This document shows, in pieces, positions 26,785 to 57,265 of a stretch of 64,000 nt of DNA. The position numbers were made by a program, and so were the translations under genes. The stretch's first letter is position 1; the number at the start of each line of letters is the position of its first letter. The stretch spans positions 434,001 through 498,000 of the forward strand of contig CDMY01000243.1 of NCBI GenBank assembly GCA_001179505.1, read 5' to 3'. The stretch comes from Vitrella brassicaformis CCMP3155. Lineage: Eukaryota; Protista; Chromerida. The notes beneath the pieces are model-generated. The model was not told the DNA's origin and searched no databases. It saw nothing but the letters and a program-made list of their open reading frames with translations.

Positions 26785-29700
26785 TCACAGCTTGTTGGCC
26801 TCAAGGAACTTCGGTATATTGAGTTGGCCGAAGAGGGGCGGCCTCTCCTTGTTCTCGTAGCAGACGATCTCGTCGCCAGGCTGCACGTCGTCATGCACCT
26901 TGAATATGATCGCACCCTCTACAGCACAGCACACAGAGCGCCACATCAACAGACGGGACACGGGCGTGTATGAGGAATATGTGCCGGTGTGGTGCGTGCC
27001 TGACCTCCTTTAGGCATTTCAGTGGCCTTCTTTCCCTGGACCGACATGGACAAGACATTCAGGCCCTCAGCTATCACCACAGACCGCCGTGTCTGACACA
27101 CACCACAGGCGATGTCCAAACACATCCTGCCTGTAGTGTCACTCCACCCCTCGTCTTTCTGTCTGGGTGGGAGGCTGCCTGGCTGGCATGCTCACGATTT
27201 TGTAGAAGTAGTCGTTGCCAGCTGCTGCTCGTCCCTCTTTGAGGTCGACGCCCGCGACAGTGCGGACCTCCTTGGACTTGTCCCGGTTGGTGACGGTGTA
27301 GTCGCCCGTACGCGTGACGATCATGCGGCCCACCGTCTTGATCAGGTAACGAGGGCCGAAGTGAAAGTCATGCAACGCCTGAATGAAGGACAGACAGACC
27401 CGACAAGACACGAGACGGCAGACATGCCACAACACGACATCTATGTACGCCCACCTCGAGGTCATCGAACAGTTTGTAGATGATCTCATGTTTGCGGAAG
27501 ATCAGCTTGTGGCGATGAAGCAGCTTAATGAACCACACAGACACACAAAAAACAGCGGCAGCACCAAGGCCACGCTCAATTCCGCCGCGAAATGAGTTGA
27601 CTGGTCATCGTAGTGTGGTGACTGACTGGTTGTGACTGACTGACCTGATGCACCCTGGAGCCCTCGAGGGGTTCCACGTTGAAGCCAAGGACGAACGAGT
27701 TGCTGACGGCTGCCTTCTCCACATCAGCCTCCGTGACAGCCCCCACACCAGAGGACACGAGGGCGAATCGGTCCCTCCGCTGCTCGTCTTTGGCCGTCCA
27801 CTGGTCGAGGTAGTCCTTGATGGCCTCCATCGACCCGTAGTTGTCAGCCTTGATAACCAGACCCAACTGCTGACCCTCAGCCGCAGCGAAACTCTCCGGC
27901 ATAGCCGGCTGGCTGCCGCCGTCCTCCTCCAGCCCCTCTCGCCCCTCGTGTTGGTCGTCGGTGTGTGTTGGTGTGTGTTCTTGTTGCAAGGACTGGTCTT
28001 CAGCGTCGATGAGGTCAGCGTCCGACTCACCCGGCATGTGGTAGGCCTTGGTCATCATCTTCTTGTGCAGATTGGGCGACTTGAGATGCACACCCTTGCC
28101 CTCCAGCACCTGCATGCAGTCCAGTGCAGTGCACAGACACATGGGCGGACAGACAGACAGACAGACAGACAGGTGTTTACAGGATGTCGGCTGTGTGTAT
28201 GGCATGGCATCCAGCCCCTCCCCCTGGGTCTCACATACATGTTTCTTGAATGCGAGCACGTCCCTCGTCACAGCAGACGTCTGGTCCGACTCCTCCAACT
28301 GACGCATCTGAGTCGATTTATCAAGTGATGAACCAAAGCCAACGCCACCAACACACAGCGCACGGTATGTATGTATGTCTTTCATATTAGGCAGCTTTGG
28401 CCCTCTCTCTGATTCCCTTCGTTCCTTGCGTGGCGTGGGTACCTCCTCGGCCCGCTTCCTCATCCTGGTGATGGTGCCGGCGGTCTTTTGGTCCCTGACG
28501 ACAACGAGGAAGTCTCCCGCCTTTGGTGTGACGCCCGTCAGCCCCACCACCTCCACTGGGGTGGACGGCGTCGCTCCCCTGGAGGAGGACAGCGGCCGTC
28601 TGGCATGGTCCAGCAGCTGACGGATCCGCGAACTGTGGGTGCCGCACACCACATAGTCACCGACCTGCACACATACACACATACATGGATGCATGGATCA
28701 ACGAATGGATACACACACACATGTGACACACAGGTGGGTGACACGGATAGCCAGACAGACAGACAGACAGACAAGTGTGCCGGCTACGATGTACAGCTAA
28801 TGTGACAGAGTCAGTCAGTCGTGCTCCATGTTCGGTGGCTTGCTTGCCTTGAGTGTTCCCCGTTTGACGAGCACCGACAGGACACGCCCCCGGCCATCAC
28901 CAAGGCTGCACACACACACAATACGACGGGACCGAAAGGGCAGCCAGCCATTCATTCTCTTCCTCATTGCCTGAGTCTGCCTGTGCGTGCGCGTGTGCGT
29001 GTGCACGTGCATGTGCATGTGTGCGCGAGTGGTTGCAGCCTGCCTGCCTGCCTGGCTGCCGTTTACTTACCCTGATTCGAGTATGTATGCCTCGGCCCTG
29101 GCTTTGTAGTCTGCGTGTAGTGTGAGCTGGTCGGCCTGCTGCACGACGGCCTCCTCCAAGTCATCCAGACCCACATGCTCCTTGGCACTCACTTCCACTA
29201 CCTGCATGTGCGACCAAACAACACCCACACACATCCATGAAGGTTCAAATGAATGACAGACATGTTCATTTCATTCAAATGAATGACACACAATACAATC
29301 AACCCAGTCAGTCAGCCGCATTCCGGCCTCTTCCGCTATACAAACGAGTGAGTACTGATGGATGGCCCGCTGACTGACTGACTGACCGACTGACCAGTGT
29401 GTCGCCGCCTTGTTTGGCGTCTCTTAGGTCCAGGTCTTTGAGCTGCTGCTTGACCCACTCGATGTTGGCGTTGTCCTTGTCGATCTTATTGACGGCCACC
29501 ACTATGGGCACACGCGCATCGCGAGCCTGCTGCAGCGCCTCCAGGGTCTGCTCACGTCACGCACACGACGAATGAGAAGATACAAGGACCAACATCACCC
29601 CATCCCTTCTGCTGCGTCTGGTGCGTGTCTCTTTATTTACCCACCTGTGGCTTGACTCCGTCATCAGCGGCGACGACGAGTACGACCACGTCGGTGACGG

Positions 29701-32308
29701 ATGCCCCTCGCCGTCTCATGCCTGAGAAGGCTGCATGTCCGGGCGTGTCGATGAAGGTCACCCGCCGGCTGGTGGTGGGCGTCACAACCTCAAACGCACC
29801 GATGCGCTGCGTGATGCCCCCTGCCTCCGACGCAGCCACCGATGTCCTGTATGTATCAAGGAAGGAGGTCGAGAGAGAGAGACAGAGAGACATACATACA
29901 TACCAGTGGGTTCCTGGCTGGCATCTGCCTCACATATCTAGATACGGATCGCATCTTTAAATGCTTACTTGCGAAGTGCGTCGAGGAGTGTGGTTTTGCC
30001 GTGGTCGACGTGCCCCATGACGGTGACGACAGGCGGCCGCGGCCGCATGTCCTTGGCCAAGGCACTCGTGTGCCGCAGCCGGATGGGCAGGGCCCTCTCG
30101 AACTCCTCAGCTATCAACTCAGCCTCCTCCACCGTCAGACGCGAGTGCACCGTCGCCTGCCCCCCTGGCAGCAACGCTGCACCCAACTCACGAACCTGCA
30201 TTGATTGCATCCACGTCAATGAATCATCGGTGAGTGAGACACACAAGGAAGGAAGTCCCGCCAAGTGGCTGGCCGGCCAAGTCCACCGATCCATCCGCCC
30301 ACACGCACCCACCTTGTCGAGTGGGATGGCAATGTGCTGGGAAAGCGCCCCCACGGTGATGTTGTGTGGATCCAGCAGGGAGGGGTCATAGTCATCCTCT
30401 GCGGCCTTCCCATCAACATCGCCCACACCCAAGCCCTCATCGGGGCTGACCACCGCGACACGACCAAGGACTGACTTGGTCTCTGTCGCCACGAGTGTGG
30501 GAGTTGCTGGAGGTGCCGGCACCGGCCTTGTAAGTGCCGCAGGAGGCCCAGCAGCTCGTTCAGTATCGTGTGCAATTGGTTGTTGGGTGTCGCCGTGCTG
30601 GTCGAGTGCCGCTGCCTCGAGCCGCTCCCTCTGTTTCCGCGCCATTTTGGTCCTCATGAGTTGCATGATGGTCTGCGTGCCCTCGTCCATCTTGTCCTCG
30701 TCCAGGGACGTCACAGGCGACACCTCCATCTTAGACGTCGCCCCATGCGACACCGCCTCCTGAATGAATGATGCAGGGACGGACGTGCACGGACATAGGC
30801 ATGCCGCACACAGACAGACAGACCATAGTTTGAATGAGCGAGGGAGAGAGATGAGCCCAGCCCGTGTCGTCCGTCTATCTATCAGGCATGCCGGTCGCCC
30901 GGCCGTGAAGCCATTCAGCATTGATCGTCGATCGTACCTTTTCAGCGTGTGCTGTCGTCCTGTCTGCGTCTGCAGTGCGTGTGGTAGCCAGCATTTCGAG
31001 CACTGCCCCGATCCACTCCTGCTGGTAAGCCTCGAACTTGGTGTCGTCCCCCCACACACCACTCAGCTGCTCGCTGGCCTCCTTCCTGGCGTCTAGAGCC
31101 CTCTGCGCGGCCAAGACGGTGGCGATGAGCGACGTGCCTCCTTTCCTTTCCGTTGGCTTGATGGACCACCCTCGCAAGTGCCTCAGAGACAGGGCCTCAC
31201 GCCTCCCAGTAGCCAGCCTCCTGAACCTGCGAGTCCCCAAGCTCTTCCTTTCATCGCCCTCCGTTGACAGAAACTGCCGCAGCGACCCCACAACGATGTC
31301 GTGGGGGGCCATGCCCTGGTGGCCAACCCCATCTGTCAAAGGTGACTCTTGGGCCTCCTGCTGCATGTCTGCTGCAGCCCTATCGCTTTCGCGGCCCAGC
31401 AAGTCCTCCGGCCCTTGCTGCTCTTGCTCTTGCTGAGGTGGCTTGTCGACAATGGTCTGGTGAGCTTGTGCCTTGGCCCCCCTCAGACTGTCTTGCAAGG
31501 TCGAGGGCAGGAAGTAAGATGGCCTGAAAAGCCTCCGCAGATCCGTCGGCAGCTCGTGCCGGGTGGGAGGAGTGGGACTGGGCTTGGCTGATGCACGGGT
31601 GCTGTTGGTGGTCGTCCTGTGTGGCAGCATGTCTTGCCTGCGGGCGTCCATGACCGCGTCCATCAAGCGCCGCATCTTGGCTATCACGTCCGCAGATACG
31701 AGAGATGACTCTTTGCTGACAGGGTGGTGCCCGGTTGCTGCTATTGTCGGCCCTAGGGGCTGGGGCTGCGTCTTCCAGGCGCCGAGCCATTCTTGCAGCG
31801 CATTCAGTGGCTGGCTGGAGGGGCGGAAGGATGGGTGGACAGGCAGGGGACCACCTGTCGGCCTGACCCGCTGCGGCAGCTGGAACTGGGCGGCTGCCGA
31901 TTTGGGCCTCCTGGGCTTGGGCTTGTAGGCCGGTGGCTTGACTGGCTGCGGCAGGTCGACATGACTCATGCCATTCGTGACGCGGTGGACCCGTGTCAGC
32001 TGCCTCTGCCGCTGCCTCTCCTCATAGGAAGCCTTTGTGCCCTTGAGTGGGTTAAACAGACGGTCCAACTCGAGGGCCGGAGGCGAGGGCCGCGCCTTGC
32101 CTGCACTGGCCGACCCACTGCCAACAACGATGCCCAAACGAGTGCGGCGGGTCTGTCCGTCAGCTGAAGTCTGCTGTAAAGGCTGCACGTACACGCGGCC
32201 CTCGCGGCTTGGCTCTGGCTGCGTCGCTGCAGATGAGTGAAGCACCCTTGCTAGCGTCGCACATGAGCGTTGTTGGATCCTCGCGGTATACGACGATAGA
32301 GCTGACAT
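26785..32308 (-). CDS. infB: Translation initiation factor IF-2, probably mitochondrial
   Basis: [61 protein letters not shown]; ends ...[31 protein letters not shown]. The N-terminus [26 protein letters not shown] is Arg/Ser-rich with no acidic residues, like a mitochondrial presequence. Confidence 0.92.
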
Positions 32309-32496
32309 TGACGCTTTATGGGAGCTGGTGGGACCCCGGTGTCCGTTAACGTGTTGCTCCTTGGAGGAATGAACGAACACTGGAGCAGATCTGCCAATCC
32401 GATGAGCTCGCACTAGGAAGCGGGCTAGGGTGCTCCCGTGCGTTGAAACGAGGGGACGACCAGACAGATCTCTCTATACGGGCTAAGGGAGGGAAG

Positions 32497-36331: not shown

Positions 36332-39300
36332 CTAGACGTCATGTCCGGCATTCGGGCTCTCTGAGTGTGTGCGTCCCGAGGCCGTCTCGGTGGTCTCCTC
36401 GACCCCGTTGTCGGTGGCCTTGTGCACCTCCACCTTCAGGGGCGACTTGGCGTCGTCACTCGGCAGCGTTGCGAACGGCGACAGGGCGTCGACGCCCTTG
36501 GCCTTCCAGTCGTCCTCAAACTCGTTGTGCTCGGTCTTCTGCAGCTCGGCCGTGAGGGACTTGACGAACTTGTTCTGCTTGTGCCGGATCTCGCTGGCCT
36601 CCATCTTGAGCCACTTGCGGCCGCCGAAGCGGTAGAACCAGACGGCGAATCCAACGATGGCGGCGGCTATGAGGACGACGATGATGATGCCGCCAATCAT
36701 CAGGCCCGGCTGGTTGTCCTCGGCCGTGAACATGTTGCTCAGCGCCAGCAGCCCCATCGGCAAAGCAGCAAACACTATCAGGATGCTGATCGATCCAACA
36801 CACACATACACACACACACACAGGCAGCCAGACACACAAGACAGACAATGTCGGTGTGCGTGGCGGGTGTGTGTGTGTGTGTGGTGGTTGGTGGCGTGTG
36901 AAGCTGACTATGCGATAGGGAACCAGCGGAAGACGGCTGTGATCTCCCCGAGGCCCCTGGCCATCCGCAGAGGGATCGCCCGCATCTGCGGAATCGGGTA
37001 CCTGCACATCCGACGCACGCAGACCAGGCAGGTGGGTGCGAGCGACGAGTGAGGGGCACACACCACACCAAGTGTACGTACGTACATGCACTCACCAAGG
37101 TGGCCACATGCACCCACGTAAATCAATGAATACCAGATGAGAATTCCGAAGATGTTGAAGAAAAGGTGACACAGTGCGATTTGCATCCCCTCGGGCTTGT
37201 CGGACACGAGTGCCGCCAGCAGCCCGGTGATGGTCGTACCCACGTTGGCACCAAGCGTCAAAGGGAACATGTGCTCAAGGTCAATCGTGCCTGTGGGGGG
37301 TGGTGGGGTGGGGGACGTCACATGACACGAATGACACGTGCAGTGACTGCACTGCAAGATAGCTATACACGTCTGTCTGTCTGTCTGTCTGTGAGTGACG
37401 CTAGATAGAGATGCGATGCGATGCGTACGTACCGAGTCCGACGAGTGGTGTGAGGACAGACGTGGTGATTGAAGACGACTGCACGAGCATCGTGAGGCCC
37501 GCACCGATGAGCATGGCCACATACTCATGGCCGATGTAGTTCTGGTGCACCACACGCTCAAAAGTCTTCTTGACCGACCCGATCAACAGGTAGCGCATCA
37601 CTTTCACCTGTGTGTGATGAAGGCAGGCAGGCACACAAACGAATGAAGAACCATTAATTACGCAAACAGCCATGGCATGGAGGGAGGGAAGAGGACACGA
37701 CACGCGCACACAGGCAGGGCAGGCCGAGGATAGATAGGTATGCTGACAGCGGTGACCGGAAGCTGTCTGTCTGTCTGCCTGCGTCCGTGAGTGTGTGTGC
37801 CCCACCCACACCCGTCGTGCCTACGTGTGCATGTACTGTAGGTACGTACCATGATGGTGAGTGCGATCATGAGCATGGCGAGGGAGACGAAGACCATGAA
37901 GACTCCATAGCTGAACTCGGCTCGCTGGAAGGCAGTCCCAGCAACCACGGCATCGCCCTTGTGAATCGCTGCACAGACACAGACAGACAGACAGACAGAC
38001 AGAGAGACAGAGAGAGGGAGACGGACAACTACTTGTGTCTGTTCTGCGCCACATGCAGTAGGTTTAGGGTCGGGTGCAGTCAGTGAGTCCTCACGGAGCC
38101 ATGCGAGTCCCTCTTTGAGGAGGTGGTCAACATATTTCGTGCTGTTGGGATCGGTAACGCTGCAGTCGAGTTCGCCTGAGGCCACCCCGGTGATGACGTC
38201 CTTGTCGGGCACGATGATGTGCTTGGTTATGACCTTGACGATCGTGTCGAAGGGACTCTCCCACCTGAGTGACGTACACACACAGGGTACGTACGTACGT
38301 TGTCAGTCACATGAATTGACTCAACAAGTACGGTAGGTACATACTCTCTCTGCGCATTGCATCCACCCCCCTCTCTCTGCGCATTGCATCCACGGGGGGT
38401 GGGGAGGGGTGGGATGGAGGTCTGGTCGTGCGTGCGTACTTTTCGCCGGTGGTTCCGATGTCGTCGTGCATGATGGCGTCAGTAAGGTGCTCGAGCATGT
38501 TAAAGATCCACTCGATCGGCAGCAGTATCAACACCGAACACAAGTTGAAGCAATCGTGAACCTACAGACACATACACACACAGCAAGGCCACCCACCCAC
38601 ACCGATAGAACGTCCGTCGGTCAAGTAAGTAGCACTAGCACACTCCCTGCCTCCCTCCCGCTGTACCTACCGTGGCCCCGGCGAAAGCCCTCTTGAACTC
38701 TCCCAAGTGGTTCATCTGGCCCAGCGACACGATCGTGTTGGTCACACTCGTACCGATGTTGGCGCCCATGATCACAGCTGCATGTCCGTGGACACACACG
38801 TAAACACACACGCGCATACGTCAGGCAGGTAAACTGCGTGGCGTGGCGTTGCGTGGCGTGGCGTGGCGTGTCGTACGGATAGCGGGTCTGATTGGTAGCA
38901 GGCCGGACCCGACGAGGCTGACAACGATGGAGGTGGTGGTAGAGCTGCTCTGCAGCGCCACCGTGGCGATGACACCGGCAGTAAGGCCGGCGATGGGGTT
39001 GGAGATGGCGCTGAAGAAAGTCCCCATACCGCACGCACCCACCGTCTTGAAGCTAAACACACACACGCGGATCCGTGCAGGTACGTCCGCCACCAGTCAG
39101 TCAGTCAGTGAGTGAGGCATCTATCTAGGTAGATATGTACAGCACTGAGTGTGTGGACGTACCTGTCTCCCATGAGCTTGAGGGCAACCAGAAACATGTA
39201 CAGAGCGCCGATGAGGATGATCACGAGGGTAGTATTCCTGAAGGAATCACATGTCACAACAAAGACACGCGTGCACATACATACACCACACCCCTTGCCG

Positions 39301-39504
39301 GGCTGGCGTTCGCGTCCCTCCGACCTCCCTCCCTTCCTTCCCCCGCACCCCGACTGACCTGACCCATCCGATGGCGCCCTTGGCGGCCGGTGGGGCCTCC
39401 TTCTCAGCGGTCTCGAGGGCCGCACCGAGCTTCGACGCACCCTTGACATACTCGGTGTCCGCCTTGGGGTGCAGCTGCTGGTCCACTGGCTGATCCGCTG
39501 ACAT
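36332..39504 (-). CDS. Sodium-dependent phosphate cotransporter, SLC34/NaPi-II (Na_Pi_cotrans) family
   Basis: Two signature repeats, [19 protein letters not shown]...[11 protein letters not shown] and [19 protein letters not shown]...GANVGTTIT, plus RAFAGATV and [19 protein letters not shown]. Confidence 0.95.
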
Positions 39505-39797
39505 CCTCACGACCACGTCCTCACAGATCTGTCACACGCACAACGACCTGCACCAGAGACACCGCAGAGAGGGCACCAGGCAGCACGGATGTTGCGCACA
39601 TGGAGGGGGGAGAGGGGTGCACAGAGAGAGTGCGGCCGACGTACCGGATGGATGTCTGCGCCAAGGGCGAAGTGGGAGCACAGGGAAGACCGAAATTTGA
39701 CGTGGGAGGCGTCTCAAGCGATCACTCCTTTGTCGCTGAGCTCGCAGATCGGGATCTGCGCGTCGAATCTCTCGCCCCCCCGTGTTTGGTGTGTGGC
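39505..39797. promoter_or_regulatory. Putative bidirectional promoter between the Na/Pi cotransporter and the beta-helix surface protein
   Basis: 293 bp separate the divergent ATGs. The interval contains the palindrome ACAGATCTGT (39523-39532) and the inverted repeat CGCAGATC-GG-GATCTGCG (39743-39760). Confidence 0.5.
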
Positions 39798-42684
39798 ATG
39801 ATGTTGAAGACCGGCGTTGTGTCAGCCCTGCTGCTGCTGGGTGCATGCCTGGGCCTCCTTGGGGCTGCTGCAGAGGAGATCATAGTCGGCAAGAACATCA
39901 CAGGTAGGTGGCTGGGATGGGTGGGATACACCCAGGCGACAGCAGCAACAATGGGGCGCAGAGAAGGAGCAGCGGCGAGAGAGATATATGCACAGATCTG
40001 ATGAATGTGTGACTGACTCATCTGGGCATTTGTTGGGGGTGGCTGTGCTTGCGGTGTTGTCTTGTGTGCAGAGGATGCGCGGTGGACCGCTGACAACACC
40101 TATTTGCTGACGGAGCAGATCTACGTTAAGGAGCCGGCAGAACTCTACATCGAACCCGGTGCGCGCTTGTGTGTGCGAATCATCCATCCACCCGTCAGGC
40201 ACCAGGATGGCTGAATGCAGTGAATGCAGCTCATGATGCAGGCCTGTGTGTCTATGTGCGCGTCGATTCAGGTGTGACGGTCAAGGCTGAGACCTTCGAC
40301 AGCAGGGGGTGAGCGAGCACATGAATGACGTCGATCGACAAGAAAGACGGACTGACCGCGTGCAGTCATGTGTCTGTGGTTGTGTGTGTGTGTGTGTGTG
40401 TGTGTGTGTCAGGTACACGACGGCCCTCATCATCAACTCGGGCGCCACCATACGAGTGAGACCACACTGCGTTGCCTTACCTGCCCTACACCCATCAAAC
40501 CAAACGCGTCTGTGCATGCGCGTGCGTATGTGCCTGTCAATTGATGCATTGATGCATTCATGACACATGGATATCAATCAGGCGATGGGGACGAGGGATG
40601 CGCCGATCACCTTCTCGGCCAACCAGCCTCCCGAGGCCATGCAGAACGCCAGGGGGCTCTGGGGTGGCATCATCGTGCTGGGCCGAGCCCCCACCAACAA
40701 GGGCGCCTCGGACGCCATCGAGGGCCTCAGCAACGCCACCTTCGGCGGCACCGACCCCGACGACAGCAGCGGAGAAATCCACTACACCAGGATATGGCAC
40801 GGAGGAGCCGGTACGTCAGTCACTAGTGAGTCAGTCAGGTGCACTGCAGTGAGGTCACAAACACAAGGTCAGGTCGATCAATCAACGTGGATATGATGTG
40901 CATTCATTCCATGCATACATACATACAGAGTTGTGGCGCGCGAATGAGATCAACGGGTTGACGTTTGGTGGTGTGGGTCGCGCCACCAAGGTGGACCACG
41001 TGGAGGTGGCATTCAACTACGACGACGGTATCGAATTCTTCGGAGGCACGGTAAGTAAGGCAGGCAGGCAGGCCGGATGGAATGGGATGCGTGGTCGGGT
41101 TTACATGTCTGTCTGTCTGACTGCACTTGTGTGGGGCCGTGTGGTGTGGTGTCTTTGTACAGGTCGACCTCAAGTACGTGTCCCTGCTGTGCAATGGCGA
41201 CGACTCACTCGACGCCGATGAGGTCAACACACACACAAAAGAGACAGACGTTCTTACAGGCAGGCGGGGCATGAGGAGTATATGCGTCTCACTTATCTGT
41301 CTGTCTTTTGGTTGCCGACTCCAATACACGCATCACATCAGGGTTACCAGGGCCGCGTGCAGTATCTGCTGGTGGTGTTGTGCAAGGACATCGCCGTGGG
41401 CGACGACTCGTTGACCGACCATGCCTTCGAGATGGACAACAACGGCAAGGACTACACGGCCTCGCCCCGCTCCCACCCCATCATCAGCCACGCCACCCTG
41501 CTGGGCCCGGGGTCGAGCAAGGACGGGTGTGACAGGAAGGTCAAGCACAGCAAGATGGCCCACTTCAGGGAGGGGCTGGGCGGCACATTCGCCAACATGA
41601 TCGTCGCCCACTCGCCCGCCGGTTTCATGTTCGAACACTTCCAGGATGCCGGGGCGGCCAACTTCACCCAGGTACTCAAGTACGTATGCGTCTACGGTGG
41701 GTGCTCTACACACCTGTTTGTTCGTATGGGGCGGCCTGGCCTGGCCTGGCGTGCATTGCATGTGGGTAGGGCTTGAGTGTGAGCGGTTCCGGGAATGAGG
41801 CCTTCCCTGACTTTCTGTATTTGAGTCCGTCGAATGTGCTGTTCAACGTGGACGATGCCGTCCATTCGGAGAGCGACATCGAGCCCCCCACCATCCAGTA
41901 CATCAGCCAAGACCCACAACTCGCAAACGTACGTCTCTCTCTGTGGCACACACACGCACATGCACACGGGTAGACGGATGGACAGCCATAGATAGATAGG
42001 TACATTACATGCCGTCCCTTCGCTCCCCGTGGGTGTGGTGTGTCAATGCAATCAATCGATGCATGTCATGTGATGTGTGTCAGGTGGACCCGTGTGTGGA
42101 CGGCCGTGAGGACGCCGACCTGTTCGATCCCAGACCCGCTGCCGGGTCACCCGCATTCTCGTGAGCCACATACATACATACAAATGAATGCACCGCACCT
42201 GGTTGCTGTGCTGCACCACTCCCCACCCCAATGTGCCCGATGGTGTGTCTGTGGTTGTGCGTGTCTGGCCATCATGGGTGACTGCAGTGATTTGGACGAC
42301 ACGCTCTCTGACGATCCGTTCTTCGACAAAGTGGGCTTCAAAGGTCAGACAGACACGCCCACATGTCCTTCATGCCCTGTCCCGTGTGCACTGCATGGTT
42401 TGGTTGTTCCTCACTGCGTCGTCTTTGCTTCTTTGCTTGCTTTGTTAACACTGGCAGGTGCATTCAATAGTAGTGACCTGTGGATAGCTGGGTGGACCTG
42501 GTGGGCCGACCAAGGCAAGCTCCCACAGACTCAGCAGGAGACAGCCGCAGACGATGCCGCAGAGGGGGGTGTCACCGATGGCGAGGGCACCTCTGCTGCA
42601 ACGCCACACACGCGCCCGGCCTCTCTCATGGCGTTCATGCTCACGTCCGTTGCCCTGGTCATCGGCATGAAAGCGGTGATTTAA
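39798..42684 (+). CDS. Secreted, probably GPI-anchored beta-helix protein resembling a bacterial extracellular lipoprotein family
   Basis: 12 in-phase exons. Signal peptide MMLKTGVVSALLLLGACLGLLGAAA; then WTADNTYLL, LYIEPGVTV, AMGTRDAPITF, WGGIIVLGRAPTN, FGGTDPDDSSGEIHYTRI, NEINGLTFGGVG, DDGIEFFGGTV, DDSLDADEGYQG, GAF...WIAGWT; C-terminal GTSAA, spacer and hydrophobic tail LMAFMLTSVALVIGMKAVI*. Confidence 0.8.
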
Positions 42685-42699
42685 TGAGGGTGGGGTAGG

Positions 42700-45600
42700 G
42701 AGGGATGGATGGGAAGGGATGGAGCAGACACGAGGAAGAAACGTTTGTCGTGGCCTGCCTGCCTGGTCCGGTGTGTGTCTTGTCTTGCTGCCTTGCAAGC
42801 AATGCATTCATGAGGGTGGGAGCGTCCGTTTGATGGATGAATGAATGGGCAAACGTTTGGGAGGCAATGAGGGGCACTCATACAGACAGACAGATGTGCA
42901 TGCATCCATGCGTAAGGATGGATGGGATGCATTGCAATGCATGGAGTTTAGCCGTCCTTGTACGTATGTCTAAGCGTGTGAGTGAGGGAGTGAGTGAGTG
43001 TACCAAATTTCTGGTGGGGTGTCTTACGTCCCTGTCTTGCTGTCTGTATGTCTGCTTGTCTGCCTCCCGTTTTCTAGTCAGTCAGCCGTTGCTTGCGCAT
43101 CCATCCATCCATCGCACGGGGAGGGGCGATAGATAGAGACCAGCCATCTATCGCTTCGTACGCATGTCTATGCATCCTACCTACACACCCACTGACTGGG
43201 GATCGCAATGAATACGACCGACACGATGGGTACCGGAAGTAAGTCAAGTCCATCCACTTGTGTGTCTGGGGGGCTCGGCTTCTCTGGCTGTCTGTCTGTC
43301 TGCCTGTGTGTGTCTGTGGTGTGACTTGTTTGTGTCTGCCTATCGCATCAGTTCCACGTACCTCTATCTATCTATCGCACAAGTGATCTTTGCGTGTCGT
43401 GTCGGGGCATCAACGAGCATCGATGCATGCTGTGCTGCTTGCTGTCGGCTGGGGCGATAGATAAGATAGACCGGTGGAAGAACAGACAGACGGACAGGCA
43501 GATCGAGACGTGAGACGTCCTGTGGGAAAGAGACGAGCGAGTACTTAGTGGGTGGGTGTGGGTGTGGTTGGTTGAGTGCATATGGGCACAGGTAGATGAG
43601 CGGTGGGCGTGTGATGGGAAATGAAATGCCGACAGACCGGTGTTTTTGAGGCCGGTGTGTCGTTTTCCCCTCAAACAACAAATACCATACCGGTCGGTGG
43701 ATAGGATTGATATTCATTGGCGACCTCTTTCGTGTCCGTGGGTGGTTTCGGTGGCCTGGCCTTGACTGGCGGGAGTGGGTGGAGGGCCCCGCAGACAGAG
43801 TGCCCGACCCGCCTGCCACAAAAGCTCATGAATGAATGAATGAATGAATGGGGGAACAGAGAGAGAGAGTATTTCTTACATGTACGCCACGCTATGCTGT
43901 GCTCTGTTTTGTGTGTGTGTGGCTCTAGTCGTTGCATGACATGACATACGCACGCCCGTTGCCCCTCGATTGCACCCCCCGCACACCCGTCAGTCAGTCA
44001 TTATAATGCACCCACTTCTGCGTGTATGTCTGTGTGTGTGTGTATCCCTTTTCCCGCTGTGGGCCACAGCACAGCGTGCATTCATCCCACCCATCTGTGT
44101 GCAGCTCAGCTGCTGGCCTGCCTGCCAACGGTCGCTCTATTGCTTGCTCCACGAGTGTGGGAGATTGGTTGATTGACACACTCACCCACCCACCTGTCTG
44201 TGTGTGTGTGTGTGCTATCGTACTTTTATCTGTAAGTGTGGCGCCTCCGTTTTGATACTTCCGTCAGTCTTTTGATCGAGGACGTTTTGCCGGACAGACG
44301 AGGAGGCGAGGAAGGGGTGGCGAGCTTGGTGAGTGATACCGCTGCCTGATGGTTGTTCGTTGTGTGTGTGATCGATCATTAATGATAAGTATACTACGGT
44401 GATTTTCTCGGCTGCCTGCCTGCCTGCCTGCCTGAAGTAGGAAAGTGTGTCGTGTCAACCAACGGATATGAGAGAGCAGATGCCACGGCACGGTAGGTTA
44501 TTCATTGGTCCATCGATCGTTTCGGACATTGCATTGCACGAGGACGTGACAGTGTGTCAGTCAATCAATCAACGCAGTGGACGGCCCTTATCAAATCATT
44601 CTCACGGTCACCTCTCAGGTCGTCTCGTCTCGTCCACACCACACTTGTTTCTACCGTGAAGCTAGTAAGACACCCCAAGACACGCAGAGCTCGCTCCGCA
44701 AATGCTTTCACTGACGTACGGATGCACGGACGGATGCACTAGCTAGCGAGGGGGTGGGGTACTGTATGGGGGGCACGTATAAATGACTGAGATCGGTCGG
44801 ACTCATGCACACAACACACATGAGTGCGCTCACTCATGATGCATGGCCACACACACACGTGATGACTGACATGAATGAATGCACCGGTGGGTGGAATTGT
44901 GGGTGGGAGCCATCAAAAATGGGCGCCGACCGCCTGGATCCGATCCATGCGATGCACTCACGTACTCACACACACACACACACACTCGTTGGTTCCCTCT
45001 CAGTCGGTTGGTTGGTTTTTTCATTCAAACGCACCCACACGAACACTGCCGGCACAGACAGACGAGACGAGACAACACATACATACCTCACGAGGTGGGG
45101 GGNNNNNNNNNNNNNNNNNNNNNNNNNNNNNNNNNNNNNNNNNNNNNNNNNNNNNNNNNNNNNNNNNNNNNNNNNNNNNNNNNNNNNNNNNNNNNNNNNN
45201 NNNNNNNNNNNNNNNNNNNNNNNNNNNNNNNNNNNNNNNNNNNNNNNNNNNNNNNNNNNNNNNNNNNNNNNNNNNNNNNNNNNNNNNNNNNNNNNNNNNN
45301 NNNNNNNNNNNNNNNNNNNNNNNNNNNNNNNNNNNNNNNNNNNNNNNNNNNNNNNNNNNNNNNNNNNNNNNNNNNNNNNNNNNNNNNNNNNNNNNNNNNN
45401 NNGGGGAGCTAGCCATCGAAGTGCTTTAGAGGACCACAAATTGCAAGTAAGACGTATCTATCTATCCACTGCAGACCGGACAGCAAGTCAGACAGGCACA
45501 CAGCAGGCAGGCAGGCCACTCACTCAGTACAAGGAGGGAGGGAGACAGATGTGTGTGGGTTGGTTCACTAGCCGCCAAAGAGATAGATGGATGGATGGAT

Positions 45601-53400: not shown

Positions 53401-56400
53401 TGGCAGGCAGGAGATGGCGGCTCTGCCGGCGTGGTATCCCTTGGGGCATCTGTTGCACTCAAACATCCCGGGTCGTGGCGAGGCGTTGCCCACAGGGCAT
53501 GCCTCGCACTGCTCCATATCGTCCCTGCGGTAGTATCCGGGGCTGCATGGGCGGCAGAAGTCCGACGACCGCCACTCGTCGTCCACCACAAAATGGCGCC
53601 ACAGGGCTGGCTTGGGCGGCTCGTACCCGGGCCGGCAACCAAACATGAGCTGCTCAAACACCACACGCAGCTGCTCCCTCACCTGGCAATCATCAAACCA
53701 TCCATCCCAAAGACACAGACATTCAGACACTGGTCGGCCGGTCGGTGCATCCATCCGCTACCACTGACTGACCATTTTCTCAGCGAGGCTCTTGGGTATG
53801 CCTGGGGTGAGGGATGGGTTCTCGAATAGGGTGATCTGGTTCTCCAGGGGGACGTTATAGAAGACGTCGGGTATGTTGCCCGAGAGCTCGTTGCCGTGGA
53901 GGAAGATCGACCGTGCCTTGGTGAGGTTGCCCATCGACACAGGCAGCTCACCACTCAACCTGAGGGGAGGGGGGCGCCGAGAGAGCGAGACACCCAATAT
54001 ACATAATGCCAGTCCATCGATGCCATCGATGGGGCGTCTTGTGTGTGTGGAGTGGGTAAGTCAGACAGACAGTCCATGCATACATACTTGTTGTATTGCA
54101 TGTACAGGTGTGTGAGGTTCTTCATGCCGGGGTAGGTCACGTTGCCGTCCTGCCCCTCGCCACCGCCTATGCACGCCGGCACACTCCCCTGCATGTTGTT
54201 GCGCGCCATCTCAAACCTGACACACAGACAGACAGAGCAGATAAGCAGAAAGGTGGCCGACTGAGTGTTGGTGTCATTCATTCATTCATTCATTGATTGA
54301 TATCCCCTCACTGACTCTTCCAGCATGGTGAGCATGCAGACTTGGTCTGGCAGCTGGGCCTCCAGTCGGTTGCCCCCCGCCTTCAGAATCGTCAGGGAAC
54401 CGCAGTGGCCGATCGAACGCGGCAACGTCCCCCTCAGCGAATTCTGAACACACACACCACAACACACCACACGCACAAACACACACACATGGACGTACCG
54501 TACGTACGTACGTCAAGACACCGCATGCACCCTCGAGTCAGTCGATGCTTGTGCGTGCAGTGCTTCCACCCACATGACATACATACATGTCCACATACAC
54601 GTACGTACCTCTTCGAGATAGAGTTCTTTGAGCTTTGATTTCTGGGAGGGGTCTTGTGGGCACAGGTTGGGTGTGAGGTCGGGGATCTGGCCGTCGAACT
54701 TGTTCTTGGCCAGGTTGATGCTGCTGCAGTGCGACAGCTGACCTATCTCGGCCGGGATAGCACCACCCAAGTCTGCTCTCATACCATACCATACACCACC
54801 GCACACACCCAACACGGGCACACATGACATGTCAGTCGACCCATTTATCCATCCATCCATAAGTACAGACACTGACTGACTGATTCATGTGTGGGAAGGG
54901 AAGGTAGCTAAGCTGACCGGCGGCCTGCAGCATGAGTTCATAATCCTCTTCGTTGCATATGATGGCGTCCCACATTCGGCAGAAGGTCCGGCTGATGTTG
55001 AACCGGCCCAGCGACTCGACTCCCTGGTTGTTCTCCAGTAGGGCGAAGTAGAGGTCGGCCACTGCCAGTTTGTCGTCTGCGCAGACTTTGCAGCTCTCAC
55101 CGCAGAACAAGCAATCGCGGGGCGTCTCCGCCACCCCCCCTGGCCACACCAGGTCCGACTCGTTGGTGAATCGCCAGCTGTCCGTCTCCCACTTGGCCAC
55201 CTCCGCCCAGTCCGTGCCCTGGTTGTTCATCAGGACGTATCGCCCCTCTCCCTCCCTGTCTTCACCCAGGTGCACACGACCAGTGACGCCGTCGAAGTCT
55301 ATGTCGGGCAGGGCGTCGAGGAGCAGCCTGCCGAGGGGGTTGACTTCGAATGATGCGCTGGACACGTTGGCGGCTGAGGTCGTCTCGTTGTCTGCTGGCT
55401 CGGGTAGTGTGCCGTTGAAGCCCTTCAGGGCCTGGTCGAGGGCTCGTGCGGCCAGCTGTGCGGCGTCATAGCTGTAGAGCACGTAGTTGCTCAGCGACTC
55501 CTCCTCCGCTCGCGTCAGGTTCAGACGGGGAACAAAACTGATGTCCACACACAGAGCAGCAAACATTCGTGACGGTGCGGGGCATTATGGGTTCTCTGTT
55601 GTCTGGCGCTTTGGTATCTACCCTCCCTCCCACCTATCGGCGGCTCCGCCTTGGCTGCTGAGTGAAGGTGTGACAGCCATGAAGCCCTGAGTGATGTTGG
55701 TGAAGTCGGGCTCAGAGAATATCCGGGGCATCGTGTCCGTCCCTAGCCAGGCCTGAACAACACAACACAACACAACACACCCAGACAGACAGAGGACAAC
55801 AAGACAGACACATCAGATCAGTCAAATCAGTCAGTCAGTCAGCCACGTGTGTGTGTGGCTGTGCTGTGTATGTCTGTTGTGCGTACGCACCGTGCCCCTG
55901 GTGAATATGCCGATTTGGTCCCCCGCTCGCAGGACGGTGTGCAGTATCGACGCACTCACCGCCATCACAAACACCGCCGCATCGTACTGATTCCGCGACA
56001 AACCTACACTCACATGCCATGACCCACACACACACATGCCGCGCAGCAGGCACAGACCCAGTGCAATGCCTGTCCTGTGTGCTTTGTTTGGTCTAGTTAC
56101 CAGAGAGTATTTCGACGGCTGTGTTTGGGTTCCTCACGGCCAGCTCGAAATTGTCGGTCGACACGTCGTAGTCCTCGCGCATCGACACAAACGTGTTCTG
56201 AATGCCACGCCCGTACGTGTCATCCTGATGGAACCCAGGCAGGCAACACACGCACAGCACACATTCCTCGGTGCGGATGGCTGGCTGTCAAAAGTCTGTC
56301 CTTCCGTTTTGATGGACCGACCGACCGAGTGGATGATGACCAGTTTGGTCCACCTAAATCGCTTTGCCAGGGAGAGAATGGCCCGCACCTGAGAGGCGTC

Positions 56401-56918: not shown

Positions 56919-57265
56919 GCACTGCACCGGCAGTCGCAATCGTCGGGCCGGGCGGCAAGAGAGGGAATGCAGACACAGATCGGCTGCACTGCTGACTCGG
57001 CGGTGTCGTCAAGATCTCCTCATGCGATGATGCACGTCGCGCTGTTCGTCGTAACCGAGGTGTTGCATATGAGTTCAGAGACAGCCGCCAGGTGGAAATC
57101 GTCGACGATCTTCAGCCTTGCACTGGCCACAGCTGAGTCACAGCACCACGCCTGTCTTTAAAAAGAAGAAAGATCGTGGGACGACGGGACGCGTGGGATC
57201 TTCGGCTTAGCTCGCAGACGGCGAGCGCGAGGAGGGAACAGGTGGAGAATAGCTGATATTGAACT

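What the first reader, a model, noticed from the sequence alone, without database searches (positions are those of the whole stretch)
39798..42684. Bacterial-family beta-helix protein domesticated as a 12-exon GPI-type surface protein (candidate HGT)
Seen: an intact ORF across 11 GT-AG introns with host-style microsatellites, so it is not contamination. It has an N-terminal signal peptide and a C-terminal small-residue omega site with a hydrophobic tail, where bacterial members would carry a lipobox or secretion tag. Stacked Asp motifs (NYDDGIEFFGG, NGDDSLDADEG, FEMDNN) look like metal-binding or catalytic turns of a parallel beta-helix. I know of no established enzymatic function for this family, so a eukaryotic, re-anchored member is a tractable handle on it.
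Basis: partly seen in the sequence, partly recalled or inferred. Interest (0 to 1): 0.72.

Follow-up and report, generated by a model that had tools for sequence, protein, structure and literature searches.

The report
Algal copy of bacterial phosphate-starvation protein
A real 12-exon gene of the alga Vitrella brassicaformis encodes a surface-anchored beta-helix protein descended from a bacterial family that is switched on by phosphate starvation, and it sits head-to-head with a phosphate transporter gene, so it probably helps the cell scavenge phosphorus.

Summary
Exons at 39798-42684 (+) join through 11 GT-AG introns into a 510-aa ORF. It is 100% identical to an annotated Vitrella brassicaformis protein. 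A metagenomic relative keeps all 11 introns (dN/dS 0.23).

The protein belongs to Pfam PF28492 (Beta_helix_4), a very large, mostly bacterial family. It carries a signal peptide and a GPI-type C-terminus in place of the bacterial lipobox or T9SS tag.

- **Not a lone eukaryotic member.** Homologues occur in chlorarachniophytes, green algae, a choanoflagellate and picoeukaryotes. Vitrella also has a paralogue.
- **Not without functional context.** In bacteria the gene sits beside a TonB-dependent receptor in most loci, often with pstSCAB-phoU, phoBR, PiT, ppk or ppx. This is the published context of ElpS (Caulobacter), FII/Fjoh_0546 (Flavobacterium) and BT4056: surface lipoproteins induced by phosphate starvation.

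In Vitrella the gene shares a conserved 284-bp divergent promoter region with a Na+/Pi cotransporter gene.

Best reading: a bacterial-derived, re-anchored phosphorus-scavenging surface protein that works without a TonB partner. Its chemistry is unknown. Interest is moderate.

The parts
39798..42684 (+). Whole coding region of the beta-helix gene: 12 exons, 11 introns, 510 aa
   Evidence: One search gives the model and the GT-AG table. One search shows 100% identity to the annotated Vitrella protein P0001, which carries Pfam PF28492.
39798..39903 (+). Exon 1: start codon, signal peptide (aa 1-25, 39798-39872) and start of the mature protein
   Evidence: AF2 predicts a helix at residues 3-20. 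Exon 1 of L002 is 90.3% identical with one in-frame 3-nt indel.
40072..40158 (+). Exon 2
   Evidence: It is 96.6% identical in L002 and the splice sites are kept.
40272..40308 (+). Exon 3
40413..40455 (+). Exon 4. The preceding intron holds the (TG)20 microsatellite at 40369-40409.
40582..40810 (+). Exon 5: the WGG, EGL and D-SG conserved blocks
40929..41050 (+). Exon 6: NEINGLTFGGVG (40943-40978) and NYDDGIEFFGG (41015-41047)
   Evidence: One search gives the coordinates. One search shows the invariant columns N173-G177, D199, D200, E203 and F205-V209.
41163..41222 (+). Exon 7: NGDDSLDADE. The motif runs 41193-41344 across intron 7.
   Evidence: D221, D222, D225 and D227 invariant. The exon is 100% identical in L002.
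41342..41671 (+). Exon 8: GYQG, a Vitrella-specific insertion (DIAVGDDSLTD), FEMDNN (41426-41443), PRSHP and REG blocks
   Evidence: The insertion is shared with the Vitrella paralogue P0251.
41770..41928 (+). Exon 9. The structure model is of low confidence here.
   Evidence: pLDDT is below 50 at residues 327-351.
42084..42160 (+). Exon 10: DPRP motif (42126-42137)
42288..42343 (+). Exon 11
42458..42684 (+). Exon 12: GAF..W end of the conserved module, acidic/Thr-Gly linker (42535-42591), candidate omega region S481-A-A plus spacer (42592-42624), 19-aa hydrophobic tail (42625-42681) and stop codon
   Evidence: The L002 orthologue has a 16-aa tail after an in-frame 9-nt deletion. No residue follows the tail.
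39514..39797 (.). 284-bp divergent intergenic region (shared promoter and 5'UTRs) between the beta-helix gene and the Na+/Pi cotransporter gene
   Evidence: It is 89.2% identical to L002 overall, with long near-identical blocks between 39514 and 39740. That is higher than the 86.2% of the gene's introns.
36332..39513 (-). Neighbouring multi-exon Na+/Pi cotransporter gene, transcribed divergently. Its 3' limit is approximate.
   Evidence: Exon fragments match PF02690 Na_Pi_cotrans (38821-39093 E=4.8e-10; 37401-37811 E=6e-6; 36908-37561 E=4.5e-4). The start codon was read at 39513. The same neighbour is present in L002.

Best explanation
This is a functional nuclear gene of Vitrella brassicaformis. 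It encodes one module of the PF28492 (Beta_helix_4) family. In bacteria this module is a surface-exposed lipoprotein or T9SS cargo encoded next to a TonB-dependent transporter inside phosphate-starvation (Pho) gene neighbourhoods. That is the ElpS / FII (Fjoh_0546) / BT4056 group.

The module entered eukaryotes from bacteria. In the Vitrella lineage it then acquired 11 spliceosomal introns and host codon usage, and it duplicated. The bacterial anchor was exchanged for an ER signal peptide plus a C-terminal GPI-attachment signal.

Proposed working (inferred). The mature protein (about residues 26-481) hangs on the outer face of the plasma membrane. A ladder of invariant Asp, Glu and Asn residues on consecutive beta-helix coils holds divalent cations. 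With these it captures, or hydrolyses, phosphorus-containing ligands. The released or captured phosphate is taken up by the Na+/Pi cotransporter encoded head-to-head with it. The two genes are probably co-induced from the shared 284-bp region when phosphate is scarce.

Shown: the gene structure, purifying selection, family membership, the bacterial genomic context and the neighbour. Inferred: GPI anchoring, phosphate regulation, metal binding and the ligand.
For: Gene reality and constraint: (11 conserved introns, dN/dS 0.23).

Family membership:
- Precomputed PF28492 hit.
- An HMM built from an alignment of 27 bacterial or metagenomic homologues plus the Vitrella protein covers residues 26-462 at 548.7 bits. 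This score is inflated because the query is in the profile.
- 57 invariant columns are retained.

Bacterial context:
- 60 of 85 loci have a same-strand TonB-dependent receptor ORF within 500 bp.
- 70 such ORFs lie within 3.5 kb of the gene, against 6 in the other 617 kb.
- 28 of 50 loci of at least 15 kb carry pst/phoU, PiT, PPK1 or Ppx.
- L006 reads RR-HK-TBDT-beta-helix-Metallophos-...-pstSCAB-phoU.
- L005 (Psychroflexus) reads beta-helix-TBDT-RR-HK-GT(PF04101). The published F. johnsoniae operon reads Fjoh_0546 (FII)-0545 (TBDT)-0544 (PhoB)-0543 (PhoR)-0542-0541 (GT, pf04101) in the same order. There FII rises by log2FC 9.9 on Pi depletion.

Literature:
- ElpS is Pho-induced, surface-anchored and then released, and it raises supernatant phosphatase activity.
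- BT4056 is 40% identical to Fjoh_0546 and distantly related to ElpS. It lies next to a TBDT in 621 genera.

Vitrella context: a divergent Na+/Pi cotransporter neighbour, conserved in L002.

Anchor. GPI synthesis is conserved in chromerids.

Fold: AF2 pLDDT 77 and pTM 0.80, with short strands in a repeating pattern. All 50 Foldseek PDB matches listed are right-handed beta-helix proteins.

Bacterial ancestry: every identified eukaryotic module falls in one subfamily (bootstrap 80) together with a Marinimicrobia/Oligoflexia clade. The 162 other sampled modules lie outside it. Their origin was checked only in part: 34 of those 112 proteins carry a T9SS tail or a lipobox, and no identified eukaryotic module is among them.
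Against: - No expression or phosphate-response data exist for Vitrella.
- The phosphate-transporter adjacency is seen only in the Vitrella lineage. Loci of the other eukaryotic homologues and of the Vitrella paralogue show no phosphorus genes.
- Purified or refolded ElpS had no pNPP phosphatase activity, so catalysis is unproven even in bacteria.
- I could not fetch ElpS, Fjoh_0546 or BT4056. Their membership of PF28492 rests on matching synteny and published descriptions, not on an alignment.
- The GPI signal and signal peptide were judged by eye.
- Foldseek E-values are weak (best 1.8e-3, TM 0.2-0.3), and the C-terminal third of the model is of low confidence.
- I had no model coordinates, so the 'acidic ladder' is inferred from sequence periodicity.
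Confidence: 0.55

Rival explanations
1. It is a carbohydrate-active beta-helix enzyme (a lyase, hydrolase, esterase or epimerase acting on an acidic polysaccharide). It would remodel the Vitrella wall or digest extracellular glycans. On this reading the phosphate-gene neighbour is a coincidence.
For: Foldseek's matches are pectin methylesterases, pectate lyases, AlgG, alginate lyase and tailspike depolymerases. Lidbury et al. modelled FI-FIII on polygalacturonases and suggested P-containing plant glycans as substrates. Stacked Asp residues resemble the Ca2+ sites of pectate lyases (my own knowledge).
Against: No Pfam carbohydrate-enzyme family is matched even at E<=1. No PDB sequence is matched at E<=10. 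Structural matches have TM 0.2-0.3. The recurrent neighbour-gene clusters in 83 bacterial loci are phosphate genes, two-component regulators and TonB receptors. No glycoside-hydrolase or SusD-like cluster recurs among the clusters I annotated, but several smaller clusters were left unannotated.
Confidence: 0.15
2. It is a non-catalytic surface protein (an adhesin or coat component) that kept only the beta-helix scaffold after transfer. It would have no role in phosphorus nutrition.
For: Other eukaryotic members are multi-module type I membrane proteins with up to 5 modules. Some are combined with SRCR or G8 annotations, and the Vitrella paralogue carries an LRR-like N-terminal region. These architectures are typical of adhesion or receptor proteins. 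ElpS itself lacked measurable phosphatase activity.
Against: All 57 family-invariant residues, mostly Asp, Glu, Asn and Gly of the motif ladder, are retained in Vitrella. dN/dS is 0.23. A scaffold-only role would not need the acidic ladder. The Na+/Pi neighbour with a conserved shared promoter region matches the bacterial context.
Confidence: 0.15
3. The C-terminus is a membrane-spanning anchor, not a GPI signal. The protein would then be a type I membrane protein like its algal homologues.
For: Homologues P0002, P0121, P0139, P0192 and P0237 end in a transmembrane helix followed by a 22-73-residue cytosolic tail. The Vitrella tail has mean hydropathy 2.16 over 19 residues.
Against: Nothing follows the hydrophobic stretch. 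The orthologue's tail is only 16 residues and contains a Lys, which is short for a bilayer span. Small residues S-A-A lie 8 residues upstream, the canonical GPI layout (my own knowledge of GPI signals).
Confidence: 0.3
4. The gene is vertically inherited from an early eukaryote and was lost many times, rather than transferred from bacteria.
For: The eukaryotic modules are not clearly separated from each other in the tree. They could form one poorly supported group beside the bacterial clade. Hosts span Rhizaria, Chloroplastida, Alveolata and Opisthokonta.
Against: The distribution is very patchy and confined to marine protists and algae. No other homologue above 50% identity appears in the listed top 150 of the 1.84-billion-protein library. 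Eukaryotes occupy one subfamily of a family whose sampled diversity lies mostly outside that subfamily. Chlorarachniophyte and green-algal copies fit endosymbiotic spread (inference).
Confidence: 0.07

Closest known systems
ElpS of Caulobacter crescentus (CC_0170), FII/Fjoh_0546 (also FI and FIII) of Flavobacterium johnsoniae, and BT4056 of Bacteroides thetaiotaomicron: Pho-regulon 'pectin-lyase-fold' surface lipoproteins paired with a TonB-dependent transporter
   Same: A module of about 430 residues that is predicted to be a beta-helix. The same conserved neighbourhood in my 83 bacterial loci (TBDT adjacent; phoBR, pst, phoU and a porin-like gene nearby). The gene order of L005 matches Fjoh_0546-0541. 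Extracytoplasmic surface display. Physical linkage to phosphate uptake genes.
   Different: The host is a eukaryote. The gene has 11 introns. No TonB-dependent transporter exists in the window. Anchoring is by a signal peptide plus a GPI-type tail instead of a lipobox or T9SS domain. The partner is a Na+/Pi cotransporter.
Pfam PF28492 (Beta_helix_4)
   Same: The Vitrella protein and all homologues carry this precomputed assignment.
   Different: The family is absent from the local Pfam copy, so I could not read its curated description or threshold.
Multi-module eukaryotic homologues (Amorphochlora GAB5359022.1, Lotharella A0A7S4DYB1, Ostreobium CAD7699375.1, Cymbomonas KAK3275063.1, Diaphanoeca EP00040_P037343)
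   Same: The same module at 36-42% identity. They are intron-containing nuclear genes with a secretory N-terminus.
   Different: They have 2-5 tandem modules and a transmembrane helix with a cytosolic tail, where Vitrella has one module with a GPI-type end. No phosphate transporter lies next to them.
Atypical alkaline phosphatase PhoAaty of dinoflagellates and other phytoplankton
   Same: A phosphate-stress cell-surface protein with a signal peptide and a GPI anchor, thought to derive from bacteria.
   Different: It is a different family. Its four defining motifs (PDM..ANEGE, EPEY, LQENN, ANEGD) are all absent from the Vitrella protein.
Right-handed beta-helix carbohydrate enzymes and phage tailspikes (for example Pme8A 8tne, AlgG 4ozz, CBA120 TSP2 5w6p)
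   Same: The general fold class returned by Foldseek.
   Different: Only weak matches (E>=1.8e-3, TM 0.2-0.4, 7-13% identity). No sequence-level relation.

Membership tests
PF28492 Beta_helix_4 (ElpS / FII / BT4056-type module) | Full-length match to the family profile | tested here: met
   Precomputed PF28492 on P0001. An HMM built from an alignment of 27 bacterial or metagenomic homologues plus the Vitrella protein covers residues 26-462, profile positions 2-415 of 416, at 548.7 bits (inflated because the query is in the profile). phmmer finds 5897 cluster representatives at E<=1e-3.
PF28492 Beta_helix_4 (ElpS / FII / BT4056-type module) | Conserved motif set (WGG, NEING, DDGxExFGG, GDDxxDxDxGY, EMD, PRSxP, REG, DPRP, GAF..W) | tested here: met
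   57 invariant and 42 nearly invariant columns across 28 sequences include the Vitrella residues.
PF28492 Beta_helix_4 (ElpS / FII / BT4056-type module) | Right-handed parallel beta-helix fold | tested here: inconclusive
   AF2 gives pLDDT 77 and pTM 0.80, with a regular succession of short strands. All 50 Foldseek PDB matches listed are beta-helix proteins, but E>=1.8e-3 and TM is 0.2-0.4. Model coordinates were not inspectable.
PF28492 Beta_helix_4 (ElpS / FII / BT4056-type module) | Encoded next to, and on the same strand as, a TonB-dependent transporter | tested here: not met
   True for 60 of 85 bacterial loci. No TBDT, pst or phoBR homologue is found anywhere in the Vitrella window, as expected for a eukaryote.
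PF28492 Beta_helix_4 (ElpS / FII / BT4056-type module) | Linkage to phosphate acquisition genes, or Pho regulation | tested here: inconclusive
   Genomic linkage is met: a divergent Na+/Pi cotransporter lies 284 bp away and is conserved in L002. Regulation by phosphate could not be tested.
PF28492 Beta_helix_4 (ElpS / FII / BT4056-type module) | Direct sequence homology to the experimentally studied members ElpS, Fjoh_0546 and BT4056 | not tested
   These sequences could not be fetched with the tools. The support is indirect: L005 has the same gene order and domain content as Fjoh_0541-0546, and published statements link the three proteins.
GPI-anchored surface protein | Cleavable N-terminal signal peptide | tested here: inconclusive
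   By inspection only: K4, a 21-residue hydrophobic core (mean hydropathy 2.07) and AAA|EE. No SignalP was available.
GPI-anchored surface protein | C-terminal signal: small omega and omega+2 residues, a 5-10-residue polar spacer, and a 12-20-residue hydrophobic tail with nothing after it | tested here: met
   S481-A-A, an 8-residue spacer and a 19-residue tail ending the protein. The orthologue has a 16-residue tail. Judged by rule of thumb, not by a trained predictor.
GPI-anchored surface protein | Host has the GPI pathway; protein is released by PI-PLC | not testable with these tools
   GPI-anchor synthesis is reported as conserved in chromerids (PMC4501334). Release needs a bench test.
PhoAaty atypical alkaline phosphatase | Four conserved motifs (PDM...ANEGE, EPEY, LQENN, ANEGD) | tested here: not met
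   Motifs were taken from Supplementary Fig. 2 of PMC4548154. None occurs in the 510-aa protein.
EHAP1 alkaline phosphatase of Emiliania huxleyi | Sequence similarity to EHAP1 (ABI51308) | not tested
   The sequence was not obtainable. The papers say only that EHAP1 resembles no known phosphatase type and has a signal peptide but no GPI anchor.
Pectate lyase / pectinesterase / polygalacturonase families | Match to a curated sequence model of those families | tested here: not met
   0 Pfam families at E<=1, 0 NCBIfam and 0 PDB sequences at E<=10.
Bacterium-to-eukaryote horizontal transfer | Eukaryotic sequences nested in bacterial diversity, patchy eukaryotic distribution, integration in the host genome | tested here: met
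   All identified eukaryotic modules lie in one subfamily (bootstrap 80) together with a bacterial clade (bootstrap 71). 162 further modules lie outside; their bacterial origin was checked only in part. The hosts are patchy. Introns, synteny and codon usage are host-like. The exact donor and the number of transfers are unresolved (neighbour-joining only).

The most novel reading that the evidence does not exclude
The PF28492 module is itself a new, His-free, Ca2+-dependent phosphate-releasing or phosphate-capturing device. Candidate activities are a phosphoesterase, phytase or polyphosphatase acting through an Asp/Glu ladder on a beta-helix. It would work on its own.

Several marine eukaryotes took the module from bacteria without the TonB transporter and re-anchored it by a GPI signal or a transmembrane helix. 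In Vitrella it was wired to a Na+/Pi cotransporter. This would mean that a widespread and so far unrecognised class of phosphorus-scavenging ecto-protein operates in both marine bacteria and algae. It could account for some unassigned 'alkaline phosphatase' activity in the sea.
Probability: 0.2. Interest if true: 0.8.

Novelty: new variant of a known kind. Interest (0 to 1): 0.5.

Why it matters
The ElpS/FII/BT4056 proteins are among the most strongly induced and most abundant exoproteins of phosphate-starved Caulobacter and Flavobacterium. They are encoded beside a TonB-dependent transporter in hundreds of genera, yet their chemistry is unknown.

Eukaryotic copies have no TonB partner. This argues that the module does something useful on its own, by binding or hydrolysing a ligand, and is not merely a transporter lid.

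The Vitrella copy is a compact test case. It has a single module, is probably GPI-anchored, is under purifying selection, and is joined to a Na+/Pi cotransporter by a conserved bidirectional promoter region.

It also adds a candidate phosphorus-stress marker for marine protists that current annotation pipelines leave unnamed. It documents anchor swapping (lipobox or T9SS tag to GPI signal or transmembrane helix) after inter-domain transfer.

Tried and rejected
- **Local library scans.** Pfam, NCBIfam and PDB-sequence scans of the 510-aa protein gave nothing. PF28492 is newer than the local Pfam copy.
- **Paper search for 'PF28492'.** No paper found.
- **PhoAaty hypothesis.** I suspected the phytoplankton 'atypical alkaline phosphatase'. 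Its four motifs, read from the paper's supplement, are absent, so I rejected it.
- **EHAP1.** Considered but not testable.
- **Profile search with eukaryotic modules.** The word prefilter filled up with Marinimicrobia sequences, so no new eukaryotes were listed.
- **Search with the C-terminal half.** It found only the L002 fragment and P0016. No close Chromera or other alveolate orthologue sharing 5-residue words came up. This is weak negative evidence, because the same index also missed the Vitrella paralogue.
- **tblastn of the protein against the window.** No tandem paralogue.
- **Contamination.** Rejected on introns, synteny with L002 and host-like GC3.
- **Intron positions in the paralogue.** I started comparing them with P0251 and gave up. 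The annotated paralogue model looks incomplete and the subject file held several loci.
- **Phylogeny.** Only neighbour-joining with bootstrap was possible, as no maximum-likelihood program is installed. The position of Vitrella inside the subfamily stayed unresolved.
- **Phosphate-gene linkage at other eukaryotic homologues.** None found.


Full report
**1. What is in the sequence**

Reading 39300-43200 and translating the three forward frames shows coding segments that switch frame at GT...AG boundaries. Joining 12 exons gives a 1533-nt ORF of 510 aa. The exons are 39798-39903, 40072-40158, 40272-40308, 40413-40455, 40582-40810, 40929-41050, 41163-41222, 41342-41671, 41770-41928, 42084-42160, 42288-42343 and 42458-42684. 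All 11 introns are GT-AG and 98-168 nt long.

The product is 100% identical over its whole length to an annotated protein of Vitrella brassicaformis CCMP3155 on a 669-kb scaffold (P0001). The window is therefore chromerid nuclear DNA, and the hand-built model equals the public one.

The introns hold microsatellites: (TG)20, (AGGC)4, (GGCCT)3.6 and (ACAT)3.8. CDS GC3 is 0.80, against 0.53 GC in the introns.

**2. Is it a living gene?**

One database hit, P0182, turned out to be a bacterial-style ORF call on a metagenome contig (L002, sample ERZ893784). That contig is collinear with the window from about 37.3 to 44.5 kb at about 83% nucleotide identity.
- Mapping my exons onto it gives an intact 506-aa orthologue.
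- All 22 splice dinucleotides are conserved.
- Exon indels occur only in multiples of three.
- Exons are 94.9% identical, against 86.2% for introns. There are 12 gapped columns in exons and 204 in introns.
- dN/dS is 0.23.

This rules out contamination and pseudogenisation.

**3. Family**

Local Pfam, NCBIfam and PDB-sequence scans were empty. The big protein collection carries a newer precomputed assignment, PF28492 'Beta_helix_4'. An exhaustive HMMER pass over 1.84 billion cluster representatives found 5897 with E<=1e-3 and 2041 with E<=1e-30.

These come from Marinimicrobia/Fidelibacterota, Bacteroidota, Rhodothermales, Ignavibacteria/Kapaibacteria, Calditrichota, Latescibacterota, Gemmatimonadota, Verrucomicrobiota and others.

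The Vitrella protein aligns from residue about 26 to about 462 with 27 such proteins at 35-43% identity. Bacterial members begin with a lipobox or end in a T9SS sorting domain. Vitrella has neither a recognisable T9SS domain nor a bacterial C-terminus.

**4. Fold**

AlphaFold2 with that alignment gave mean pLDDT 77 and pTM 0.80. The model shows a long run of short strands. Confidence is low at residues 327-351 and 463-510.

All 50 Foldseek matches listed from the PDB search are right-handed parallel beta-helix proteins: tailspikes, pectin methylesterases, AlgG, pectate lyases, NosD and TMEM2. All are weak (best E 1.8e-3, TM 0.2-0.4, 7-13% identity). The fold class is supported, and there is no close solved relative.

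**5. What the bacterial relatives do: genomic context**

Three first look-ups, in an Oligoflexia, a Flavobacteriia and a Marinimicrobia genome, each showed a TonB-dependent receptor directly adjacent. One showed an OmpR-type regulator and histidine kinase, and one showed a metallophosphatase followed by pstSCAB-phoU.

I then analysed 85 loci (83 non-redundant):
- 60 have a same-strand receptor ORF within 500 bp, and 67 within 2 kb.
- 70 receptor ORFs lie within 3.5 kb of the gene, against 6 in the remaining 617 kb.
- Clustering all neighbouring ORFs and checking representatives against Pfam identified PiT/PHO4 (13 loci), PPK1 (6), Ppx/GppA (5), pst/phoU (16), response regulators (23), kinases (18) and a porin-like protein (16).
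- 28 of the 50 loci of at least 15 kb hold at least one dedicated phosphate gene.

The sample consists of the 80 loci most similar to the Vitrella query, so it leans towards the FCB group of bacteria.

**6. Link to published work**

A full-text search led to Lidbury et al. (bioRxiv 719427 and ISME J, PMC8115612).
- Phosphate-depleted Flavobacterium secretes abundant 'hypothetical lipoproteins FI, FII, FIII' modelled on pectate lyases or polygalacturonases.
- FII (Fjoh_0546) has only the InterPro pectin-lyase-fold signature. It rises by log2FC 9.9 on Pi depletion.
- It lies in the operon Fjoh_0541 (GT, pf04101), 0542 (OprP), 0543 (PhoR), 0544 (PhoB), 0545 (TBDT, pf07715 and pf13715), 0546 (FII).
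- My Psychroflexus locus L005 reads beta-helix, TBDT (PF13715 and Plug), RR, HK, GT (PF04101) in the same order.

The same papers, and Price's preprint on 'lids' of TonB-dependent transporters (10.1101/2023.03.17.533168), add further links:
- They relate FII to ElpS of Caulobacter.
- They relate FII to BT4056, which is 40% identical to Fjoh_0546.
- BT4056 has no Pfam but falls in the pectin lyase superfamily.
- It is adjacent to a TBDT in 621 genera.

ElpS is a lipoprotein of about 50 kDa induced by phosphate starvation. It is displayed on the surface and then released. Overexpression raises supernatant phosphatase activity, but the purified or refolded protein is inactive on pNPP.

I could not fetch these three sequences. 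The identity of 'their' family with PF28492 therefore rests on matching size, fold annotation and synteny. I rate it as very likely but not proven.

**7. The Vitrella neighbourhood**

Upstream, on the minus strand, lies a multi-exon gene whose exon fragments match PF02690 Na+/Pi cotransporter. Its ATG is at 39513, which leaves 284 bp between the two start codons. The same neighbour is present in L002.

The shared intergenic region is 89.2% identical between the two organisms, with long near-identical blocks. That exceeds the 86.2% of the gene's introns.

A eukaryote has no outer membrane and no TonB system, and none is in the window. The gene's partner here is a plasma-membrane phosphate importer. 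I take this as independent support, from another domain of life, for a phosphorus-acquisition role. It also suggests the module can work without a TonB-dependent transporter.

By my rough estimate, an immediate phosphate-transporter neighbour by chance has a probability of the order of 0.1%. This assumes some tens of such genes among about 23,000, from my own knowledge of the genome paper. It is still a single observation. Loci of other eukaryotic homologues show no such linkage.

**8. Anchoring**

The N-terminus has a basic residue, a 21-residue hydrophobic core and AAA|EE. The mature protein carries four N-x-S/T sites.

After the conserved module come three elements:
- an acidic, Gly/Thr-rich linker (aa 462-480);
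- S481-A-A with the 8-residue spacer TPHTRPAS;
- a 19-residue hydrophobic tail that ends the protein.

The orthologue's tail is 16 residues. That is too short for a comfortable membrane span and is typical of a cleaved GPI signal. Chromerids retain GPI-anchor synthesis (PMC4501334).

Other eukaryotic members instead end in a transmembrane helix plus a 22-73-residue cytosolic tail. GPI anchoring is my preferred reading, at about 0.6-0.7, but no trained predictor was available.

**9. Eukaryotic distribution and origin**

Named cluster members show homologues in several groups:
- Amorphochlora amoebiformis and Lotharella globosa (chlorarachniophytes; 5 modules, 2403-2404 aa);
- Ostreobium quekettii (3 modules) and Cymbomonas tetramitiformis (green algae);
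- the choanoflagellate Diaphanoeca grandis;
- MMETSP and Tara (MERC) transcripts.

Three further observations place unnamed members in eukaryotes:
- P0002 lies on a contig with RING-finger and Uso1-like genes.
- P0016 lies on compact contigs with JmjC, WD40/Utp, proteasome and Rubisco-activase-like genes.
- The Ostreobium and Amorphochlora genes span 8 kb and 59.6 kb, with paralogues next door.

Vitrella itself has a second member (CEM11109.1, P0251). It is 41% identical and shares a lineage-specific insertion.

I built a neighbour-joining tree of 216 single modules (397 columns, 100 bootstraps).
- Every identified eukaryotic module falls in one 54-member subfamily (bootstrap 80).
- That subfamily also holds a 19-member bacterial clade (bootstrap 71) of Marinimicrobia-, Oligoflexia- and related single-module proteins.
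- The 162 other modules lie outside it. Only some of those proteins carry recognisable bacterial tags, and no identified eukaryote is among them.

Vitrella P0001, its L002 orthologue (bootstrap 100) and its paralogue (bootstrap 80.5) form a lineage-specific group. Its attachment inside the subfamily is unresolved. It is on average closer to the bacterial clade (distance 1.01) than to the other eukaryotes (1.22).

Conclusion: bacterial ancestry is well supported. Whether there was one ancient transfer with later algal spread or several transfers cannot be decided with these tools. The transfer into the Vitrella lineage is old enough for a 41%-identity paralogue and 11 introns.

**10. Families considered and excluded**

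The dinoflagellate and phytoplankton atypical alkaline phosphatase PhoAaty is also a signal-peptide-plus-GPI phosphate-stress protein of bacterial ancestry. Its four defining motifs are absent here. EHAP1 could not be tested. No carbohydrate-enzyme model matches.

**11. Mechanism and confidence**

| Status | Items |
|---|---|
| Shown | Gene, selection, family, bacterial Pho/TBDT context, Na+/Pi neighbour, loss of bacterial tags |
| Inferred | GPI display; co-regulation with the transporter by phosphate scarcity; divalent-cation binding by the Asp/Glu/Asn ladder on successive coils (E174 / D199-D200-E203 / D221-D222-D225-D227 / E258-D260, spaced about 22-37 residues apart); capture or hydrolysis of a phosphorus-containing ligand that feeds the transporter |

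The chemistry is open even for the bacterial proteins. I put 0.55 on the overall reading. I give lower weights to a carbohydrate-enzyme role (0.15) and a purely structural or adhesive role (0.15).

**12. Verdict**

The finding is real. The gene is neither unique among eukaryotes nor from a family without context. The new element is the phosphate link across domains of life and the evidence that the module functions without a TonB partner.

It is a new variant of a known kind, of moderate interest (0.5).

Noticed in passing
window 39837-39848 (aa 14-17, L-G-A-C): The eukaryotic signal peptide contains a lipobox-like L-G-A-C at the position where bacterial homologues carry their lipoprotein cysteine. 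ElpS has LAGC at residues 17-20. It is conserved in the L002 orthologue. It may be a relic of the bacterial lipoprotein signal, or chance.
   Followed up: partly
L002 (ENA ERZ893784, contig k147_3390020), whole 8194 bp: A metagenome contig collinear with the window at about 83% nucleotide identity, with 93% identical protein and the same introns. It points to an undescribed close relative of Vitrella brassicaformis in that sample.
   Followed up: partly
L088 8001-11973 (V. brassicaformis scaffold CDMY01000409.1): The Vitrella paralogue CEM11109.1 (841 aa) has a 450-aa N-terminal extension with a hydrophobic segment and LRR-like repeats in front of the beta-helix module. The annotated model seems to lack part of the module and its C-terminal DPRP/GAF..W end, so it may be mis-annotated.
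   Followed up: partly
window 39514-39740: The divergent intergenic region has long blocks that are almost identical between Vitrella and L002, better conserved than the introns. These are candidate shared regulatory elements. I did not search for motifs.
   Followed up: no
window 45103-45402: A run of 300 N (a scaffold gap) about 2.4 kb downstream of the gene. GC drops to 0.44 in the 44-46 kb bin because of it.
   Followed up: yes
window about 27579-32473 (-): Long minus-strand ORF pieces match IF-2 / EF-G domain 2 and the GTP_EFTU P-loop. This looks like an eIF5B/IF2-type translation GTPase gene.
   Followed up: partly
window 56223-57008 (-): An ORF piece matches ANF_receptor / Peripla_BP_6. 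This is a ligand-binding domain of receptor type, itself of periplasmic-binding-protein ancestry.
   Followed up: no
L068 8864-9859 and 15 other bacterial loci (cluster 5): A protein of about 331 aa with a beta-barrel-like sequence recurs next to the beta-helix/TBDT pair in 16 loci. It matches no Pfam model at E<=1e-3. It may be a divergent OprP-type phosphate porin, like Fjoh_0542 in the published operon.
   Followed up: partly
L090 10001-69599 (Amorphochlora amoebiformis) and L089 (Ostreobium): The chlorarachniophyte homologue is a five-module, 2403-aa protein whose gene spans 59.6 kb. In both algae another family member lies next door, so there are local tandem expansions.
   Followed up: no
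L091/L092 10001-11356: P0016 is an intronless single-module member on gene-dense eukaryotic contigs, seen on 24 contigs from several samples. It was the only distant hit for the C-terminal half of the Vitrella protein. It probably comes from an abundant marine picoeukaryote that I did not identify.
   Followed up: partly
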